From NCBI RefSeq assembly GCF_030144855.1, contig NW_026778903.1:310001-374000 (forward strand): a DNA stretch of 64,000 nt, read 5' to 3'. The notes below the pieces were generated by a model. The model saw only the letters and a list, made by a program, of their open reading frames with translations. It did no database searches and was not told the DNA's origin. Shown piece by piece: positions 24,306 to 63,870 of the stretch. Both the position numbers and the translations under genes were made by a program. Positions within the stretch are counted from its first letter, which is position 1; every line of letters starts with the position of its first letter. This stretch comes from Hypanus sabinus. Its lineage: Eukaryota.

Positions 24306-24790
24306 CCTGAGGAGAAAGATAAGTTGAGGTGAGGCGGGAACTCTGCAGAATCGGATCCCACCTCAGACAGGAACTGCCCAGGGGGCCATCTGGACTTAAT
24401 TATACTTTGGGGATTGGATTTAATGGAAAACCATGCCTGAATTGGGGTCAGTCAGCCTGCCTGTGTGCGGGGTAAATTGTGTGTTTTTGATTTGATTGAG
24501 TTTTTTTTTACGAGAGGGACTGATGAAGTCTGAGCTGTGTATGCTGCCGACATGGATTTTAGCAAGGCCTTGATGGGAGGCTCATTGGGTTTAAGGTGCG
24601 TGAGATCCCGAGTGAATCGGCTGTTTGGCTTCAGAATTGGCTTCCCCACATCAGACAGAAGGTAGTGGTTGATGAGATGTATTCTGACTGGAAGTATTTG
24701 GACTAGGGGTATTGTGCAGGGATCCGTACTGGGACGTCAGCTGGATGAAACTGTGGATGTATGTGTCAATATGCTTGTAGACGATGGCCC
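24306..24790 (-). pseudogene. Truncated duplicate of the receptor leader-exon acceptor and upstream intron
   Basis: Colinear with 63253-63790 including the embedded CR1 piece; breaks off at the first exon base. Confidence 0.7.
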
Positions 24791-25139
24791 CTCTGGATTG
24801 TTGTGTTAACCGCTGGTCACCCAATACAGGAAGGGTGTGAAGCGGGTGCAGCACAGGTTAACCAGGGTGTTGCCTGGATTGTTGGGTACCTGCTACGTAG
24901 AGAGGTTGAACTGGGGTGGTTTGTGGAGCGTTTGGGGAGAGCTGATAGAAGTTTATGATGTTACCAAAAGCATAGAGGGAGCAGACAGCCGTTGGCTTTT
25001 CCTCAGAGTCGTAATGTCCAACACTAGGAGGACGTGCAGCTATAAAGTTAATGTGCGTGGCAAGTTTTCTTTAGTGGTGAATTCCTGGAATGTGCTGGTG
25101 GAATCCCACATGACAGGTGTTTAAAAGGCTCGAGAAATA

Positions 25140-26530
25140 TACATGAATATAGACAATAGGTGCAGAAGTAGACCATTCGGCCCTTTGAGCCTGCACTGCC
25201 ATTTTGAGATCATGGCTGATCAACTACTATCAATACCTGGTTCCTGCCTTGTCCCCGTATCCCTTGATTCCCCTATCCATAAGATACCTATCTAGCTCCT
25301 TCTTGAAAGCATCCAGAGAACTGGCCTCCACTGCCTTCTGAGGCAATGCATTCCAGACCCCCACAATCTGGGAGAAGAAGTTTTTCCTTAACTCTCTCCT
25401 AAATGACCTACCCCTTATTCTCAAACCATGCCCTCTGGTACTGGACTCTCCCAGCATCTGGAACGTATTTCCTGCCTCTATCTTGTCCAATCCCTTAATA
25501 ATTTTATATGTTTCAATCCGATCCCCTCTTAATCTCCTTAATTCCAGCGTACACAAGCCCAGTCTCTCTAACCTCTCTGCGTAAGACAGTCCAGACATCC
25601 CAGGAATTAACCTCGTGAATCTACGCTGCACTTCCTCTACAGCCAGGATGTCCTTCCTTAACCCTGGAGACCAAAACTGTACACAATACTCCAGGTGTGG
25701 TCTCACCAGGGCTCTGTACAAATGCAAGAGGATTTCCTTGCTCTTGTACTCAATTTCCTTTGTAATAAAGGCCAACATTCCATTAGCCTTCTTCACTACC
25801 TGCTGCACTTGCTCATTCACCTTCAGTGACTGATGAACAAGGACCCCTAGATCTCTTTGTATTTCTCCCTTACCCGACTCTATGCTGTTCAGATAATAAT
25901 CTGCCTTCCTGTTCTTACTCCCAAAGTGGATAACCTCACACTTATTCACATTAAACATCATCTGTCAAGTATCTGCCCACTCACCCAGCCTATCCAAGTC
26001 ACCCTGAATTCTCCTAACATCCTCATCACATGTCACACTGCCACCCAGCTTAGTATCATCAGCAAATTTGCTGATGTTATTTTCAATGCCTTCATCTAAA
26101 TCGCTGATGTAAATCGTAGACAGCTGTAGTCCCAATACCAAGCCCTGTGGCACCCCACTAGTCACCACCTGCCATTCTGAGAAACACCCATTCACCGCTA
26201 CCCTTTGCTTTCTATCTGCCAACCAGTTTTCTATCCATGTCAATGTCTTTCCCCCGATGCCCTGAACTTTGATTTTACCCACCAATCTCCTATGTGGGAC
26301 CTTATCAAATGCTTTCTGAAAATCGAGGTACACTACATCCACTGGATCTCCATTGTCGAACTTCCTGGTTACATCCTCGAAAAACTCCAATAGATTAGTC
26401 AAGCATGATTTACCCTTGGTAAGTCCATGCTGGCTCGGCCGAATCCTATCACTGCTATCTAGTGATGCCACTATTTCATCCTTAATAATGGACTCTAGCA
26501 TCTTCCCCACCACCGATGTCAGGCTGACAG
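25140..26530 (-). mobile_element. Young 5'-truncated CR1 LINE
   Basis: ORFs 25965..26513 and 25230..25961 share a frame, split by one stop (WADT*QMM); YLDFQKAFDKVPH and KFADDTKLGG RT motifs. Confidence 0.95.
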
Positions 26531-26620
26531 GCTGCCCAATGAATCAGAATCTCTCTGCCTCTGGTGCTGCCGGAACAGAAGGTGATGAGATAGTGTCGCA
26601 AAATACCGCATGTGGGGCAT

Positions 26621-26850
26621 ACCGCGCCTCTTGCTCCGCCCCTCCTGCTCGCGCACCGCGCCTCTTGCTCCGCCCCTCCTGCTCGCGCACCGCGCCTCTT
26701 GCTCCGCCCCTCCTGCTCGCGCACCGCGCCTCTTGCTCCGCCCCTCCTGCTCGCGCACCGCGCCTCTTGCTCCGCCCCTCCTGCTCGCGCACCGCGCCTC
26801 TTGCTCCGCCCCTCCTGCTCGCGCACCGCGCCTCTTGCTCCGCCCCTCCT
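26621..26850. repeat. 34-bp GC-rich minisatellite (about 7 copies)
   Basis: ACCGCGCCTCTTGCTCCGCCCCTCCTGCTCGCGC repeated exactly. Confidence 0.95.
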
Positions 26851-27044
26851 GCCCCTCACCGGCGGGAACTGGTTCTTGGTCTTTTCACAGACACATTGAA
26901 ACGCTACAGCGCAATACAGGCCCTTCGTCCCACAAAACTGTGCCGAACATGTCCGTTCTGTCATGCTTTTGTAGTTTATCGTATGTTTGGTGATACTTTA
27001 AATTAATAAAAGACTTCACTCCCTTTAACTTCATTCACTCACAA

Positions 27045-27340
27045 GAAGTGAGAATCTGGACAGTTCCGTTCCAGATTCACACAGAGATTCGCTAAACACA
27101 GACACTACCCCCATCCCGCGACCTGAGCCCAGCTCCCGGTGCGGTAGGTGTCTGTCCCCGTCTCGGCAATAACGGTCCGGTAGTGCAACACCACCGTCAC
27201 GGTCCCGGGATTTTTACCTGAGGATAATTGGCTGTGTGATAATCCCATACACCGGGCAGAGAACCGCTCCAAACCCCATCGCGACCGCTGTGGAGTGACA
27301 GACTCCGGTTCTCTGGGGCTGGGCCAGCTCAGCTATGACG
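27045..27340 (-). pseudogene. Highly decayed V-type Ig exon relic
   Basis: AQPQRTGV..; VVLHYRTVIAETGTDTYR; NGTVQILTS before gtgagt; stops and frameshifts. Confidence 0.45.
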
Positions 27341-40862: not shown

Positions 40863-41047
40863 CGAGGGTTCAGGGGTTTATGTATAGAATCACATTGCTG
40901 GGAGTGGACCACAGGCTGGGATCTAATCCGAGCGTTCAGCGGGATAATATATATGAAATAACAGAACTGGACATGCGGTCCAATCCCAGGAGGAATCAGG
41001 GAAGCGGCGGTGGAAAGTGAACCAGGGGAGAGATACCGGAGACTCAC

Positions 41048-41407
41048 CTCGTACCAGGAGCACGGTCCCGTTCCCTCGGAGCAGCAGCTGCCGGTCGGGA
41101 AGGTGAACGGACGCCAGGCAGCGGTAGGTGTTGGAGTGGCTCGGGCGGAGGTGCCGGAGTTGGAGGGAGAGTCCCGCGCCGATCTCACTCTCAGGTAGGG
41201 CGGCTTCCTGCTGGGATTCCTTGGGGGGCGGGTAGACGACACGTTCCTCTTCCCCCTCCCCCGTCCCGCCGATCACCCAGTAGGGGTAGATTATCACCCG
41301 GGGTTCCGTCAGCCCCAGAACTTCGCAGTGCAGCGTCACGTTGGAGCCACTCGGGACCTCCAACCTCTGAGGCAACTGGGACACGTGGAGGGTGGCCAGG
41401 GAGCTGT
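41048..41407 (-). CDS. VJ-type Ig V exon (V1), CD28H/NKp30-like
   Basis: gtgacag|360 nt|gtgagt, phase 1-1; VSQLP..VTLHC..YW..LSLQL..TYRC..GNGTVLLVR. Confidence 0.9.
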
Positions 41408-42708
41408 CTGTCACATAGTGAGGGAGGGAGAATGGTGAGGCAGCGTCTGTAACACATAGAGGGAAGGAGAGAGAGAGGTGCATGAGTGAGTTTCTGTAAT
41501 ACATTGAGGGATGGAGAGTGACGAGTAATCGTCTAACACATGTAGAGAGGGAGTCGTGAGGGAGGGTCTGTAATACAAGGAGGGAGGGAGCATAATGAGG
41601 GAGCATCTGCAACACATGCAAATAGGTAGAGAGATTAGATAGGGAGCGTCTGTAACACTTTGAGGAAGGGAGAAAATAGTGAAGGACAGAGCAGGGCAGA
41701 GATTAAATGTGGAGTGTTATCAAACTGTAAGGAACGAGTTAAACAATATTCGTTCTTAGTATGTGCTAAAATAAAAAAGGAAGTCTGCCAGACAAGATGG
41801 TGTTAATCCGGAGCGGAACGGATCTGAGAAAGTGGAAGGAGTACAAGTCTCCAGCCTGGAGAGTAGATCATGATTAATACAAGTTTGTGTCGGGAAGGCG
41901 AGGCCTTTGTCCAGGTATCAAATTGTGACCCATCAGAGAGAGTTCTAGCGTGAGAGTTGTGTTAGAGTTTTAAAGGATATCGAATGGAGGTAGTACGGGT
42001 AAATCTTTGTGTCAGTCGGGAGAATTTTCTATCAGACCACGTTACAACCAGTGATAATGATAAGAATTGGGGGAGATAGAGAAAAGTACGTCCAGTGAGA
42101 GAGAGATGAAAGTTTGTGGGATCTGTGATTCCTTCCGGTATCTGCATATCAGCTCGTTCAGTGGATGGGAAGTGTTTGTTTCTCGCGACATCATTAACAC
42201 TTCGTTTTTCTTCTTGCATTACATGGTTATATAATTATAATAAAACAATTTATTTTAGTTTAACGTGTGTACAGTTGTCCCCTTTGTTTGTCAATACAGA
42301 CCCGAATGCATATTGCTGAATCAGTAAAGAACACGGAACGAACTTTCAAACAATTATCGTCAGGCAAACACAGCCCAAAATGGGGCAAACTCTGCCAAAC
42401 CCTCCCACTTCTCCCCATGTCCTTCCTCCCATTCAACCCGTGTCCATGACATTTCCCTTCCCTGCCCTCCACAGGCGTCCCCTCCTCCCTCTCTCCCACC
42501 GCGATTCTCCAGCTCCCTCATCCCCTCAGACTTGCACAATTCATCGAAAGATACACAGATGTACTGCCCATGATCCGGTTAGAGACTGGGATCTAACCCA
42601 GCAAGTCAGGAAAATTATATATATTAAAGCGGAACAGGATATTGTATTGGATCCCAGTAGGCAATCGGGAATCCGCGGGGATTAAGGGCAGTGGGACCGG
42701 AGACTCAC

Positions 42709-43068
42709 CTCGTACCAGGAGCACGGTCCCGTTCCCTCGGAGCAGCAGCTGCCGGTCGGGAAGGTGAACGGACGCCAGACAGCGGTAGGTGTTGGAGTGG
42801 CTCGGGCGGAGGTGCCGGAGTTGGAGGGAGAGTCCCGCGCCGATCTCACTCTCAGGTAGGGCGGCTTCCTGCTGGGATTCCTTGGGGGGCGGGTAGACGA
42901 CACGTTCCTCTTCCCCCTCCCCCGTCCCGCCGATCACCCAGTAGGGGTAGATTATCACCCGGGGTTCCGTCAGCCCCAGAACTTCGCAGTGCAGCGTCAC
43001 GTTGGAGCCACTCGGGACCTCCAACCTCTGAGGCCACTGGGACACGTGGAGGGTGGCGAGGGAGCTGT
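42709..43068 (-). CDS. VJ-type Ig V exon (V2)
   Basis: gttacag|360 nt|gtgagt; 3 nt differences from V1 (one L/W replacement). Confidence 0.9.
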
Positions 43069-43901: not shown

Positions 43902-44047
43902 NNNNNNNNNNNNNNNNNNNNNNNNNNNNNNNNNNNNNNNNNNNNNNNNNNNNNNNNNNNNNNNNNNNNNNNNNNNNNNNNNNNNNNNNNNNNNNNNNNN
44001 NNNNNNNNNNNNNNNNNNNNNNNNNNNNNNNNNNNNNNNNNNNNNNN
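43902..44047. other. Assembly gap (146 N)
   Basis: Run of N. Confidence 1.
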
Positions 44048-60820: not shown

Positions 60821-61196
60821 TCAATTAGATAGATTAGATATTTGCATTGATCGGGTGTAGGTAGAAGTGGCCACTAAGTGCAAATTTATCACTCAACTCC
60901 TCTTGCCATTTAAGGAGCAGCTCGTATCTGCTGCCTATTGTTGGTAACTGGTTTACGATTGTCACAAATACCAAGACACAGATCACGCGTTCATCTTCTT
61001 GGGTCCCAGACGTTTGGTGATGGCGGGACAGACGTTGTCCTTGAGTCTGGTTGGACCAGTTTGAACTGTTTGTATCTTCTGCTGACGGGCAGTGGAAGAG
61101 GAGAGAATGTATAAGTGCCAAGGGTCCTGAATTCTGGGGATAGTGGGATCTCACTGTGCGTAGACAGCCCACAATGTTCTGTGTGGTCCAACCTTC

Positions 61197-61218
61197 TCAC
61201 GAGCCACACATTCCGCAC
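61197..61218 (-). CDS. Receptor gene B, candidate terminal exon
   Basis: catgcag|G TGC GGA ATG TGT GGC TCG TGA; phase 2 gives WCGMCGS*. Confidence 0.4.
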
Positions 61219-61401
61219 CTGCATGTAGAACAGAAGGCCGTAAGGAGAGTCTGATCACAGGGTGACACGGGCAGGGAGTGGAGCTGAGGTGGGGAGGGGA
61301 TTCACAGCTGGAGGGCAACTGAAGAACGGAAGGGGTACAGCGAAGCCACCAATGGGGAGGTCTGGAATAGAGACTCTCCAGGAATGGATGAGGTCACTTA
61401 C

Positions 61402-61447
61402 CAGAGAAAGAGAAGCACGGCCACAGGCACACAGACTGCCACCGTCA
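61402..61447 (-). CDS. Receptor gene B, transmembrane exon
   Basis: cttccccag|46 nt|gtaagtgacct; VTVAVCVPVAVLLFL. Confidence 0.7.
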
Positions 61448-62336
61448 CTGGGGAAGAGAAATACTATAATCAGAGCAAATCGACCAGAAATGTACAGTAT
61501 AGATGTGGAATAGTCTGTTTACACCCACACCTCACCGCGCGGTTCCATCTATTCCATTGCGCACTGGGGATTGGGATCTATGGAACTGGGGGGGGGGGGG
61601 TTCTTGCTGATGTTGTTTGTTGCTCCTTCTGTTCTGATTTGTATATTTACTGCAGACACCAGAATGTGTGCTGACAATCGCAGGCTGCCCCCGCACCTCC
61701 TTCGGCTCTTAGTCGTTAACACAAAGGATGCATTTCACCGTATGTTTCAATGTACATGGAACAAACACAGAGAATACAAATTCTCCCGCCCTATCCCACT
61801 GCATTTTGCATCAAGAAATATACCCATCCCCTTATATGTCAAGTACATGTTTTGTACGCAGTGGCACAGGTAGACAGGTCCGCTGGCCTTCAGCAATCAG
61901 GAGATTTACAATATTGATTACCCTGCTATTGGACAGATGCCATTCAGCTGTAGAGAGAGCCGAGGGGATTTGACGATGTTGCCCAAGGGACTGAGCTATT
62001 GAGAGAGGCTGAACATTGGGGTTTTATTCACAGTAGTGTTGGAGACTGAGAGAGGTGCATAAAATTTGAGGGATGTAAATAAGGTGAATACATTCTTCCT
62101 AACCCTGAGTTGTGGAATCAAGGAAACGGGGGTTTAAGATGAGAGGAAACATTTAAAATGGAGCACAGGGTTGAGAAAAATCAGCCGCTGTTCAAATGGC
62201 AGCACAGACTCAATGGGCTGAATGGCCTTATGCTGCTCCTCTGCCCTCTGTTGTCAAACTGCCCAGCACGGCAATGGGGAAAAGAGCAGGAGGAGGGGAG
62301 AGACCCGCTCACTTCTGGGAGTCATTTAAACCTCAC

Positions 62337-62480
62337 CTCGAATTCCCATCAGCACATTAAAGTCCCACGATTCTGCTCTTTTGGAACTGTCCGTCCTAGT
62401 GGACACAATCTCAGAATTCGTCACCGGTGGGGAGGTGGACGTCCCGTCTGCCACTGTCTCCTGTCTGAGACTCTCCGAAC
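62337..62480 (-). CDS. Receptor gene B, Ser/Thr stalk exon
   Basis: cgacag|144 nt|gtgagg, phase 1-1; SESLRQETVADGTSTSPPVTNSEIVSTRTDSS.. Confidence 0.75.
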
Positions 62481-62643
62481 CTGTCGAACATGATGGGAAC
62501 ACCTCAGTGCTGAGCTGCTCTCCCCAGTTCCCCAAGTCTTTTGGGCCAAAGTGCCTGTTCCAAGTCCAGAGTGTCCCTCGTGGCACGGAGAGAATGTACA
62601 TCAGAATGGAGTATCAGACCCTCCCTCTCCCATCAGCACTTAC

Positions 62644-62889
62644 CCGATGTGTTGTAGACCTCACAATAGACAGTGTGAGGGATACCCTGGGTGTAGTTCA
62701 GGGTGACACCGCCAGCTACCACCCTGGCCTGGCTGGCGATCCGACAGTGGAGTTCGTTGCCTTTGCCTCTGGTGCAGTTATCCCGGAACTGTCGGAGGTT
62801 GTGAAGCCGCAGGATCTGGGACCTGGACATGGTGCAGGGACAGCTGAGGGAGATGGGTTTTTCAATGAACTTACAGGGGCCGTGATCAC
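62644..62889 (-). CDS. Receptor gene B, six-Cys ectodomain exon
   Basis: cggcag|246 nt|gtaagt; DHGPCKFIEKPISLSCPC..PHTVYCEVYNTS. Confidence 0.8.
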
Positions 62890-63206
62890 CTGCCGGGAGA
62901 GGAGTGTCAGGGTTAGTGGGTTCAGAGGGAGGTCATCCTCCCCTTCATAGAGTGGTTCCTCATACACTGCCCCATCACAGCCCCAGGGTCAGACAAACAA
63001 TGAATCTCTCCCTCCCCCTACCGTCTCATAATACCATACTGGAACCAGATACAAGGTGAAATTCCCTCTACAATGTCGCATCGCCCACTCCATGGGTCAG
63101 ATGAAATGCAGTTCCCTGCAGACTGTCCCATCACAGGGATCAGACACAGAATGATTCTCACTCAACCGTGGACACAGAATCTCCCTCTATGCTACGTTGT
63201 ACTTAC

Positions 63207-63253
63207 GAGCAGCAGATCCGACCGTGAACAACAACAGACAGATTGCGATGGAC
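63207..63253 (-). CDS. Receptor gene B, signal-peptide exon 2
   Basis: ctcctcag|47 nt|gtaagt; SIAICLLLFTVGSAA; first exon not found in window. Confidence 0.75.
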
Positions 63254-63419
63254 CTGAGGAGAAAGATAGGTCGAGGTGAGGAGTGAACTCTGCAGAATGT
63301 GATCCCACCTCAGACTAGAATTGTCAACAGCGGTCAGTTTAGTCATGAACAGCTGGAACTGTCCAGCCAGTAGCCTGATTTTAAATGTTCCTTTGGGATT
63401 GGATTTAATGGAAAATCAT

Positions 63420-63870
63420 GGCCAAATCGGGGTCAGTCAGGCTGTTCTTGTGTGGTGTCAGTTGCGTGATTTTGACTCGATTTTGTTTTTTGACAAGGTG
63501 GAGGGTGACTGATGGAGTATGGACAGTAGTTATTATCTACATGGATTTTAGCAAGGCCTTTGACAAAGTCCCTGATGGGAAGCTCATCCAGTTTAAGGGG
63601 CGCGGGATGGAGAGTGAATCGGCTGTTTGGATTTAGAACTGGCTTGCCTACATCAGACAGAAGGTAGTGGTTGAGGGGATGTGTTGTGACTGGACGTATT
63701 TGACCAGTGGTGTTGAGCAGGGATCCATACTGGGACCTCAGCTGAATGAAACTGGATGTATGGGTCAATATCCTTGGGGACGATGGTCGATGGAATCCAG
63801 TCCAGGCAAGTGTGCGTTATTGGGTGTTTGTGAGATCATATTTAAAGGACCAGTGCATGTTAATGGCCAG
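63420..63870 (+). mobile_element. Old CR1 RT fragment
   Basis: IYMDFSKAFDKVPDG; shared with duplicate at 24.4-24.8 kb. Confidence 0.75.

What the first reader, a model, noticed from the sequence alone, without database searches (positions are those of the whole stretch)
61197..63253. Gene B: diverged paralog of gene A, about 40 kb away
Seen: same exon sizes and phases for the leader (47 nt) and ectodomain (246 nt), a similar stalk (144 vs 147 nt), and conserved C, CPC, LxLHNL, FRDNCxRG, QARV and TxYCE. Both frames stay open despite substantial divergence, which argues for purifying selection. The TM exons end in different phases (0 vs 2), so the tails differ (candidate WCGMCGS* in B). Inference: a small multigene family with divergent tails.
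Basis: partly seen in the sequence, partly recalled or inferred. Interest (0 to 1): 0.75.

Follow-up and report, generated by a model that had tools for sequence, protein, structure and literature searches.

The report
Tail-less paralog in ray-only membrane-protein family
Gene B is a real, apparently unannotated copy of a small cell-surface glycoprotein family found only in rays; it keeps the family's six-cysteine outer domain but has almost no inner tail, and whether it is expressed could not be tested.

Summary
On the minus strand, gene B has five exons with canonical splice sites: 47, 246, 144, 46 and 22 coding nt. The first three match gene A in size and phase. The ectodomain exons are 52% identical (E 4e-22).

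The genome is Hypanus sabinus. Gene A is RefSeq LOC132385339. No protein matching B appeared in the searches that returned family members.

An exhaustive profile search found relatives only in rays and sawfish, all "uncharacterized", with no Pfam or solved-structure match. AlphaFold2 gives a confident nine-strand beta domain (pLDDT 90). Its nearest structures are IgV domains, at background-level scores.

A Mobula birostris RefSeq isoform ends in the same residues. B's TM-exon phase (2) is the usual family state, and A's phase 0 comes from a one-base shift.

dN/dS between A and B is 0.35 for the ectodomain (p = 3.5e-4) and about 1 for the stalk.

B's first exon, with the ATG, lies outside the window.

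The scan has noted this family before: gene A (s1-172399) and the adjoining window (s1-178117).

The parts
63207..63253 (-). Gene B leader exon (second coding exon, 47 nt). Enters in phase 2 and leaves in phase 1. Encodes SIAICLLLFTVGSAA, the hydrophobic core of the signal peptide.
   Evidence: Acceptor ctcctcag, donor gtaagt. Upstream read-through hits stops with no ATG. 15 of 16 residues (with the junction Arg) match Hemitrygon P0023.
62644..62889 (-). Gene B ectodomain exon (246 nt, phase 1-1). Six Cys and three N-X-S/T sequons (NCT, NYT, NTS).
   Evidence: AF2 pLDDT 90.1, pTM 0.77, nine beta strands. All 7 invariant and 10 near-invariant family columns are intact in B.
62337..62480 (-). 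Gene B stalk exon (144 nt, phase 1-1). Ser/Thr/Pro-rich and lacks the stalk Cys that A-type members carry.
   Evidence: 80% identical to the Hemitrygon P0023 stalk. In the full-length model of P0005, the stalk is disordered (pLDDT <50).
61402..61447 (-). Gene B TM exon (46 nt, phase 1 to phase 2), encoding VTVAVCVPVAVLLFL.
   Evidence: 13 of 15 residues match both Mobula P0002 and Hemitrygon P0023.
61197..61218 (-). Coding part of the gene B tail exon: (W)CGMCGS plus TGA. It sits at the same position as the tail exon of A and other family members.
   Evidence: acceptor tacatgcag. Identical C-terminus in Mobula birostris P0002. Shares GAGAAGGTTGG with the A tail exon.
60986..61135 (-). Downstream open frame, 88% identical to the 50-aa tail that RefSeq predicts for the Hemitrygon orthologue P0023. 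In B it is probably 3' UTR.
   Evidence: In B the only AG acceptor within reach (ccccag|AATTC) would give TG|A, an immediate stop (read output).
61540..61713 (-). Intronic stretch between the stalk and TM exons. It is homologous to the extra, frame-shifting exon of Mobula birostris isoform X1 (P0017). In B it is interrupted by a poly-C run and a stop.
   Evidence: P0017 110-185 aligned to 61713-61390.
63254..63786 (-). 3' part of B intron 1. The last ~55 nt resemble exon-1 coding sequence of orthologues but have no ATG. The whole block has a paralogous relic at 24307-24787.
   Evidence: 73% over 536 nt, E 4e-91.
16588..27279 (-). Gene A (LOC132385339), the comparison copy. Exon 1 27279-27217, leader 21712-21666, ectodomain 20319-20074, stalk 19261-19115, TM 16870-16812, tail 16644-16588.
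   Evidence: P0001 and P0016 are identical to the spliced translation.

Best explanation
Shown: Gene B is a genuine member of a multigene family, restricted to rays and sawfish, that encodes small type I membrane glycoproteins. The layout is a split signal peptide, one 82-aa six-cysteine all-beta ectodomain exon, a disordered Ser/Thr/Pro stalk exon, a TM exon and a tail exon. B belongs to a well-supported "B-type" clade that separated from the A-type before stingrays and mobulid rays diverged.

Shown: B's closest relatives over the stalk, TM and tail are Hemitrygon P0023 and Mobula birostris P0002. B's tail exon keeps the usual family phase, but the polybasic tail seen in most other members (W-RQRRRMCRR...) is replaced by WCGMCGS-stop, as in Mobula.

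Inferred: The mature protein would be an N- and O-glycosylated ectodomain. It would be held at the cell surface by a C-terminal hydrophobic segment with essentially no cytoplasmic part. Two juxtamembrane cysteines would be available for palmitoylation, or the segment could act as a GPI-attachment signal. Such a protein could not signal on its own. It would more likely act as a ligand, decoy or partner chain beside its long-tailed paralogs. The setting suggests an immune-type recognition role: a tandemly duplicating cluster, a V-set receptor gene between A and B, and a fast-changing surface on a fixed cysteine core.

Not shown: Expression and the first exon of B.
For: - **Exon structure and splice sites:**
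- **Paralogy with A:** E 4e-22.
- **Taxonomic range:** the exhaustive profile search found 11 related clusters, all in Hypanus, Hemitrygon, Mobula or Pristis. The only other hits were repeat-driven matches to large repetitive proteins.
- **More Hypanus paralogs:** P0021 and P0022 lie on the same contig.
- **Conserved core:** six Cys, D36 and E76 are invariant or nearly so across 15 domains, and all are present in B.
- **Structure:** AF2 of the B ectodomain gives pLDDT 90, all beta. A full-length relative models as signal helix, beta domain, disordered stalk and TM helix.
- **Clades:** the B-type clade has 100/99 support.
- **Tail:** the C-terminus VCVPV.VLLFLWCGMCGS is shared with Mobula P0002. 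The stalk and TM are 80-87% identical to Hemitrygon P0023.
- **Selection:** ectodomain omega 0.35, p 3.5e-4.
- **Neighbourhood:** V-set exons lie between A and B.
Against: - No protein matching B was returned by the protein searches, although three other Hypanus loci were. B may therefore be unannotated, non-coding or a pseudogene in RefSeq.
- No ATG-bearing first exon lies in the window.
- RNA evidence was unobtainable.
- B has a long terminal branch, 0.19 against 0.06 for P0023.
- B-lineage relatives look structurally unstable. Hemitrygon P0023 has Tyr in place of the sixth Cys and a different tail. The Mobula isoforms skip the stalk or shift the frame.
- An intact ORF is weak evidence. In a substitutions-only simulation, 17-65% of copies stay open at 3-12% divergence.
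- Palmitoylation, GPI attachment and any ligand or decoy role are pure inference.
Confidence: 0.68

Rival explanations
1. B is a recently inactivated or never-expressed copy, a pseudogene or relic in a birth-and-death cluster. Its frame is still open only because elasmobranch sequence changes slowly.
For: - No protein matching B was returned by the protein searches.
- The window has no start codon or first exon.
- The ancestral long tail downstream of the stop is frame-broken in B.
- A relic copy of the same 5' flank sits in gene A's intron, so partial dead copies do occur here.
- Ectodomain identity to Mobula (67.5%) is no higher than pseudo-translated non-coding sequence (about 75%).
- The ORF-survival simulation is permissive.
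Against: - All four acceptors that follow the leader and all four donors are canonical. All six Cys and all 17 conserved columns are intact.
- The same seven-residue tail and stop occur in Mobula, and the TM plus tail is 20/22 identical against about 70-75% for other segments. That points to a truncated form kept since before the Dasyatidae-Mobulidae split.
- First exons in this family lie kilobases upstream. Gene A's is 5.5 kb from its leader, and the orthologous genes span 5.87 kb. Absence from the window is therefore expected.
Confidence: 0.25
2. B is anchored by GPI rather than by a transmembrane helix. The terminal hydrophobic stretch, which has no basic stop-transfer residues, would be a GPI signal. 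B and its long-tailed paralogs would then form a GPI/TM pair, like Fc-gamma-RIIIB and IIIA.
For: - The protein ends in a 22-residue hydrophobic run, with no charged residue after the Arg that precedes it.
- Most other family members carry a run of basic residues right after the TM.
- A small-residue triad (D-S-S), a polar spacer (KRAESWD) and a hydrophobic run lie upstream (read).
Against: - No GPI predictor was available.
- The hydrophobic run after that candidate site would be about 30 residues, which is long for a GPI signal.
- Small residues are lacking at the positions 9-11 residues before the VTVAV core.
- Hemitrygon's predicted orthologue has a 51-aa cytoplasmic tail.
Confidence: 0.25
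3. The six-Cys domain is a much reduced immunoglobulin V-type domain. The family would then be a divergent relative of single-V co-receptors such as CD28, ICOS, CTLA-4 or CD8.
For: - The nearest structures are almost all IgV domains: nanobodies, CTLA-4, ICOS, CD28, chicken CD8aa, CD84 and nectin-2 D1. About 75 of 81 residues align at about 3 A.
- The architecture is the same: leader, one-domain exon, Cys-bearing stalk, TM and short Cys-rich basic tail. Extracellular exons are phase 1-1.
- ISLSC and VYC resemble B-strand and F-strand motifs (read from sequence).
Against: - Pfam V-set gives no hit at E up to 10.
- hhalign against the neighbouring V-set exons gives probability 0.2%.
- The domain is about 25-30 residues shorter than a V domain, has no equivalent of the G strand, and lacks the conserved C-strand Trp at the usual spacing.
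Confidence: 0.15
4. B is a membrane-bound CXC chemokine of the CXCL16 or CX3CL1 type: a CPC motif, a mucin stalk and a TM.
For: Only the C-P-C motif and the stalk-plus-TM layout.
Against: - No Pfam hit to any family, so none to the chemokine family.
- The model has nine beta strands and no C-terminal helix.
- No chemokine appears among the structural neighbours.
- The domain is encoded in a single 246-nt exon.
Confidence: 0.02

Closest known systems
RefSeq 'uncharacterized protein' models of rays: Hemitrygon akajei XP_072... (P0023), Mobula birostris XP_072123319.1/XP_072123318.1 (P0002/P0017), Mobula hypostoma LOC134350231 (P0005), Hypanus sabinus LOC132385339/385341/385355
   Same: Same six-Cys ectodomain (68-80% identity to B), stalk, TM and exon logic. 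P0023 shares B's distinctive KPISLSCPC motif, stalk and TM. P0002 shares the exact WCGMCGS end.
   Different: B itself was not returned as a predicted protein. P0023 has Tyr at the sixth Cys and a 51-aa tail from a downstream exon. P0002 skips the stalk exon. Long-tailed members (P0004, P0021, P0022) keep a polybasic stretch and a roughly 45-residue tail.
Single-IgV type I co-receptors (CD28/ICOS/CTLA-4, CD8)
   Same: Signal peptide, one beta-sandwich domain exon, a stalk (with a Cys in A-type members), a TM and a short Cys-containing basic tail. They are the nearest structural neighbours.
   Different: No sequence or profile similarity. The domain is about 81 aa with three non-canonical disulfides and no G strand. 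Structural scores are at background level.
TM/GPI or long-tail/short-tail paralog pairs in immune receptor clusters (e.g. Fc-gamma-RIIIA/B), from general knowledge
   Same: Tandem paralogs with similar ectodomains differ mainly in how they are anchored and whether they carry a cytoplasmic tail.
   Different: There is no charged TM residue, ITIM or ITAM in this family. The anchor type of B is untested.

Membership tests
Ray/sawfish six-cysteine type I glycoprotein family (unnamed; RefSeq 'uncharacterized') | Six invariant Cys at fixed spacing (C5, C16-x-C18, C38, C48, C75), plus D36 and E76 | tested here: met
   Alignment of 15 domains. B has all of these and all 10 near-invariant residues.
Ray/sawfish six-cysteine type I glycoprotein family (unnamed; RefSeq 'uncharacterized') | Exon plan: 47-nt leader exon, 246-nt phase 1-1 domain exon, phase 1-1 stalk exon, TM exon ending in phase 2 (Trp = TG|G), tail exon | tested here: met
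   for B. The W junction is seen in P0003, P0005, P0021, P0022 and P0002. Exon borders in other species are inferred from proteins only, because no DNA was obtainable.
Ray/sawfish six-cysteine type I glycoprotein family (unnamed; RefSeq 'uncharacterized') | Significant profile match to other members | tested here: met
   hmmsearch E 2e-45 to 2e-08 for 11 clusters. tblastn of members onto B gives E 1e-18 to 1e-41.
Immunoglobulin V-set domain | Match to the Pfam V-set/Ig profiles | tested here: not met
   No family at E up to 10. The neighbouring genuine V exons score E 2e-7 with the same tool. hhalign probability is 0.2%.
Immunoglobulin V-set domain | Ig beta-sandwich with nine strands including G, and a structural match clearly above background | tested here: inconclusive
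Transmembrane chemokines (CXCL16/CX3CL1) | Chemokine fold (three-strand sheet plus C-terminal helix) and a match to the chemokine (IL8-like) profile | tested here: not met
   No Pfam hit to any family. The model is all beta with nine strands and no helix.
Ly6/uPAR three-finger domain | 8-10 Cys with a C-terminal CCxxxxCN, and a profile match | tested here: not met
   Six Cys, none of that motif. No Pfam hit.
GPI-anchored proteins | C-terminal hydrophobic signal with no cytoplasmic residues, preceded by a spacer and a small-residue omega site | not testable with these tools
   The hydrophobic C-terminus with no basic residues is present. Omega-site scoring needs a dedicated predictor or an experiment.

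The most novel reading that the evidence does not exclude
The six-cysteine module is a new extracellular domain that arose in, or diverged beyond recognition within, batoid fishes. It would seed a birth-and-death cluster of surface molecules, interleaved with V-set receptor genes, in which long-tailed, frameshifted and tail-less (lipid-anchored) paralogs coexist. B would be the long-maintained tail-less form, kept for over 100 My as a decoy or partner of its signalling-competent relatives, with its ectodomain surface under diversifying selection.
Probability: 0.2. Interest if true: 0.6.

Novelty: new variant of a known kind. Interest (0 to 1): 0.42.

Why it matters
Cartilaginous fishes are the oldest lineage with antibody- and T-cell-based immunity, and their lineage-specific surface receptors are poorly catalogued. 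This family has no Pfam domain, no solved relative and no paper found here, yet it models confidently as a compact disulfide-rich beta domain. It sits in a duplicating cluster next to an Ig V-set receptor gene.

Gene B adds a member that did not appear among the database proteins the searches returned. The family also turns out to hold at least three tail states: long basic, frameshifted and truncated. That gives a concrete handle for asking what the family binds and whether tail loss is functional.

If B is merely a dying copy, the locus is still a clean example of birth-and-death evolution in a slowly evolving genome. In absolute terms this is a modest finding: an orphan family member with unknown function.

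Tried and rejected
- **Sequence and feature searches, all empty or noise:** Pfam on both ectodomains. ESM Atlas feature search, best score 0.61. PDB sequence profile search, no hit at E up to 10.
- **Weak Pfam hits:** Adeno_E3 hits on three relatives are below threshold and map to inconsistent regions. Rejected.
- **Large repetitive hits** P0011 and P0013-15 in the profile search are bacterial repeat proteins or translated satellite. Rejected.
- **Structure searches** in PDB, AFDB clusters, Swiss-Prot, BFVD, the Atlas and VIA-wide gave nothing above background.
- **Chemokine, Ly6 and sushi ideas** were rejected on the predicted fold and the lack of profile hits.
- **In-window first exon:** the only in-phase candidate is ATG 63346, MTKLTAVDNSSL, with a donor at 63308. 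It would need a 55-nt intron and does not resemble orthologous exon 1. Rejected.
- **Read-through from upstream** of the leader hits stops with no ATG.
- **Orthologue DNA** for codon-level tests was not retrievable, and P0002 is not on record.
- **Exon versus intron identity** by global alignment did not discriminate: shuffled sequences gave 0.74. Discarded.
- **The search for homologous proteins with the ectodomain alone** found nothing, not even the 133-aa P0002. I treat this as uninformative.
- **Literature:** two full-text searches found no paper on this family.
Full report
**1. What is in the sequence**

The feature lies on the minus strand. Reading 63320 to 61150 and locating the exons by script gives five exons for gene B:
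- leader, 63253-63207 (47 nt)
- ectodomain, 62889-62644 (246 nt)
- stalk, 62480-62337 (144 nt)
- TM, 61447-61402 (46 nt)
- tail, 61218-61197 (22 nt, ending in TGA)

Each exon has an AG acceptor, and each exon except the last has a GT donor. The joined frame reads SIAICLLLFTVGSAA-R-DHGPCKF...VYCEVYNTS-G-SESLRQ...LMGIR-VTVAVCVPVAVLLFL-W-CGMCGS*.

Gene A has the same plan: leader 21712-21666 (47 nt), ectodomain 20319-20074 (246 nt) and stalk 19261-19115 (147 nt). Its TM exon is 16870-16812 (59 nt) and its tail is 16644-16588. Its first exon is at 27279-27217.

The two ectodomain exons are 52% identical over 77 residues by tblastn, E 4e-22. The window holds no further ectodomain copy.

**2. Whose genome, and what family**

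An exhaustive HMMER profile search with the A+B ectodomain alignment ran against 1.84 billion representative proteins. It returned 11 related clusters at E 2e-45 to 2e-08. The only other hits were matches to large repetitive proteins, driven by their repeats, which I discount.

All 11 clusters are RefSeq "uncharacterized protein" models. They come from Hypanus sabinus, Hemitrygon akajei, Mobula birostris, Mobula hypostoma and the sawfish Pristis pectinata. P0001 and P0016 are identical to the spliced gene A, which is LOC132385339 of H. sabinus. This identifies the genome.

A second search with a full-length family alignment added three proteins:
- LOC132385341 of H. sabinus (P0022), A-like with a long tail
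- LOC132385355 of H. sabinus (P0021), a model that fuses two units
- Hemitrygon P0023

No shark, skate, chimaera or bony-vertebrate protein was found. No protein corresponding to gene B was returned by any search. B is therefore probably not annotated as protein-coding.

Two literature searches found nothing on the family.

**3. Where B sits in the family**

A maximum-likelihood tree of 15 ectodomains separates a B-type clade (support 100/99) from the A-type sequences.
- B-type: B, P0023, P0002, P0005, P0004, P0006 and both units of P0021.
- A-type: A, P0022, Mobula P0003, Pristis P0007, and Hemitrygon P0008, P0010 and P0012.

Both types occur in Mobula and in dasyatid stingrays. The A/B split therefore predates that divergence. 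The ectodomain alone does not resolve relationships inside the B-type clade.

Other exons do identify B's nearest relatives. Hemitrygon P0023 shares B's unusual KPISLSCPC motif. Its stalk is 80% identical and its TM matches 13 of 15 residues. Mobula birostris P0002 ends VTVGVCVPVVVLLFLWCGMCGS, against B's VTVAVCVPVAVLLFLWCGMCGS.

A-type members carry "CC" at domain positions 47-48 together with a stalk cysteine (ECPR). Six of seven B-type members, including B, lack both. I read this as the loss of a probable fourth disulfide.

**4. The tails**

The direction of change can now be given.

In most members the TM exon ends TG|G (Trp) and continues into a basic stretch. Examples are LW-RQRRRMCRRVPV and LWW-QRGKRCRRRSVEMETHREIPLS.... 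B keeps this phase. However, its tail exon now reads W-CGMCGS-stop, and the remnant of the long tail (HSEIPLS...) lies downstream in another frame.

Gene A is the derived one for phase. The family-type frame of its tail exon (RQRQKRCRRRLVEMEMLSEM...) is still open and matches P0021 and P0004 (E 0.004 and 0.001). It is one base out of register with the annotated product. This agrees with the earlier follow-up on gene A (s1-172399).

The WCGMCGS tail is supported in two ways. It occupies the family's usual tail-exon position, and it recurs exactly in Mobula.

A rival ending exists. RefSeq gives Hemitrygon P0023 a 50-residue tail from a downstream exon, and B has an 88%-identical open frame at 61135-60986. 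In B, though, the only acceptor within reach would give TG|A. Either way B has at most seven residues after its membrane segment.

**5. Selection**

Nei-Gojobori estimates between A and B are:
- ectodomain: dN 0.355, dS 1.01, omega 0.35 (Fisher p 3.5e-4)
- stalk: omega 0.96
- leader: omega above 1, on 2 synonymous and 10 non-synonymous changes

So the domain has been constrained over the long A-B history, and the stalk has not.

For B's own lineage I could not obtain orthologous DNA. As a rough yardstick I used the pieces of Mobula isoform X1 that translate apparently non-coding sequence. These are about 75% identical to the same frames in B (52 of 69 residues, hand count). Against that:
- ectodomain: 67.5%
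- leader: 69%
- TM plus tail: 91% (20 of 22)

This suggests the anchor is conserved while the ectodomain surface changes at least as fast as neutral sequence. Two readings fit: relaxed constraint, or diversifying selection on a fixed core. The core is indeed fixed, because none of the 17 invariant or near-invariant columns is altered in B.

This estimate is crude, and it assumes orthology of the ectodomain exon. The open frame by itself is weak evidence. In a substitutions-only simulation, 17-65% of copies stay open at 3-12% divergence.

**6. Structure and comparison with known folds**

AlphaFold2 on B's 81 residues with the 15-sequence alignment gave pLDDT 90.1 and pTM 0.77, with nine beta strands and no helix.

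A full-length relative (P0005) models as signal helix, beta domain, disordered stalk (pLDDT below 50) and TM helix.

No search gave a significant match:
- Foldseek against PDB: best E 0.2, TM 0.45-0.54 (nanobodies, CTLA-4, TCR V-alpha)
- AFDB clusters and BFVD: nothing
- Swiss-Prot models: ICOS from five mammals at E 0.4-1.7

Sequence profiles agree that there is no detectable Ig relationship. Pfam finds nothing, the PDB profile search finds nothing, and hhalign against the neighbouring true V-set exons gives 0.2% probability.

The domain is therefore best described as a compact disulfide-rich beta sandwich that loosely resembles an IgV domain. I do not file it as IgSF. The CXC-chemokine idea suggested by "CPC plus mucin stalk plus TM" fails on the predicted fold and the absence of a profile match.

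**7. The missing first exon**

The leader exon enters in phase 2, so an upstream exon must supply the ATG. Reading upstream in frame gives stops and no ATG. The only in-phase ATG-plus-donor candidate in the window would need a 55-nt intron and is not homologous to orthologous first exons.

In gene A the first exon is 5.5 kb upstream of the leader. The Hemitrygon and Mobula orthologous genes each span about 5.87 kb, whereas B covers 2.3 kb from its leader to the downstream stop.

In addition, the 533 nt upstream of B's leader are colinear with a relic block in A's first intron (24307-24787, 73%, E 4e-91). That block lies 2.9 kb below A's exon 1.

Both extrapolations put B's exon 1 near 66-67 kb, outside the window. 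Its absence here is therefore expected and is not evidence of decay.

**8. How it most likely works**

Shown: the gene structure, family membership, conserved core, truncated tail and predicted topology.

Inferred: a signal peptide is cleaved near GSAA|RD. The ectodomain carries three N-glycan sequons and is held by three disulfides. The stalk is probably O-glycosylated. The C-terminal hydrophobic segment holds the protein on the cell surface.

Most other members place a run of basic residues straight after the membrane segment, and B has none. It has two cysteines at the membrane-cytosol boundary. I therefore favour a tail-less, possibly palmitoylated anchor. A GPI signal is a live alternative that I could not score.

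A protein like this cannot signal by itself. The most economical role is as a ligand, decoy or partner chain alongside its long-tailed paralogs. The immune flavour rests only on context: tandem duplication with relics, V-set receptor exons between A and B, and a fast-changing surface.

**9. Verdict**

The candidate tail is corroborated, and the polarity of the phase change is resolved: B is ancestral in phase and A is shifted.

Two things remain open. One is whether B is expressed or is a recently dead copy, which I put at about 25%. The other is what the family binds.

The scan has met this family before on other DNA: gene A (s1-172399) and the adjoining window (s1-178117).

Noticed in passing
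window 24307-24787 (minus strand), inside gene A intron 1: Colinear copy of the 533 nt upstream of B's leader exon (73% identity, E 4e-91). The last 71 nt are 87% identical. Homology stops exactly at the leader acceptor, and transposon-like sequence follows instead of a leader exon. This looks like the relic of a third family copy.
   Followed up: partly
window 20395-20603 and 20845-21651 (gene A intron, leader to ectodomain); degenerate in 62950-63170: A 52-nt minisatellite (4 and 15.6 copies, 93-95% matches) fills A's intron. B's homologous intron keeps only a few ~70%-identical units that TRF does not call.
   Followed up: partly
window 63275-63310 (minus strand): The last ~55 nt of B's intron 1 read, in two frames, like the coding end of exon 1 in relatives (ILQSSLL against Hemitrygon MAVCSILQSSALR; GGIT..PIFLLR against gene A GIITQPIILR). 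They have no ATG or donor. This would fit an intron born by duplication of an AGGT-containing exon piece, or a decayed exon-1 duplicate.
   Followed up: partly
window 42596-43045 and 40926-41621 (minus strand): Two near-identical Ig V-set exons (Pfam V-set E 2e-7 and 5e-7, 84% identical over the longer stretches aligned) lie between genes A and B on the same strand. They match the tandem-V receptor noted earlier (s1-172410).
   Followed up: partly
P0021 (H. sabinus LOC132385355, same contig, outside the window): This RefSeq model joins the TM exon of one family unit directly to the leader exon of the next (...VLILW|SIAECVW...). TM exons leave in phase 2 and leader exons enter in phase 2, so read-through splicing between tandem units stays in frame. 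It could be real or an annotation artefact.
   Followed up: no
window 16588-16870 (gene A TM and tail exons): Gene A's annotated tail (ETTPEKMSEKVGRDGDAQ*) is one base out of register with the family frame. That frame is still open for about 41 codons (RQRQKRCRRRLVEMEMLSEM...). The shift appears to lie at the end of the TM exon (CTGGGTAC).
   Followed up: yes
alignments A2/A3 (family-wide): A "CC" at domain positions 47-48 co-occurs with a stalk cysteine (ECPR) in all A-type members. Both are absent in six of seven B-type members, which suggests a fourth disulfide or an interchain Cys lost in the B type. Two B-type domains (P0023 and P0021 unit 1) also lack the sixth core Cys.
   Followed up: no
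window 43902-44047: A run of 146 N (assembly gap or mask) inside the V-set receptor region.
   Followed up: no
window 63480-63800 (plus strand) and 17900-18700 (minus strand): Reverse-transcriptase-like LINE fragments (the FSKAFDKVP motif in the first; a related motif, SEGL**AAT, in the second) flank or sit within introns of both genes. The one upstream of B is shared with the 24.3-kb relic, so it predates that duplication.
   Followed up: no
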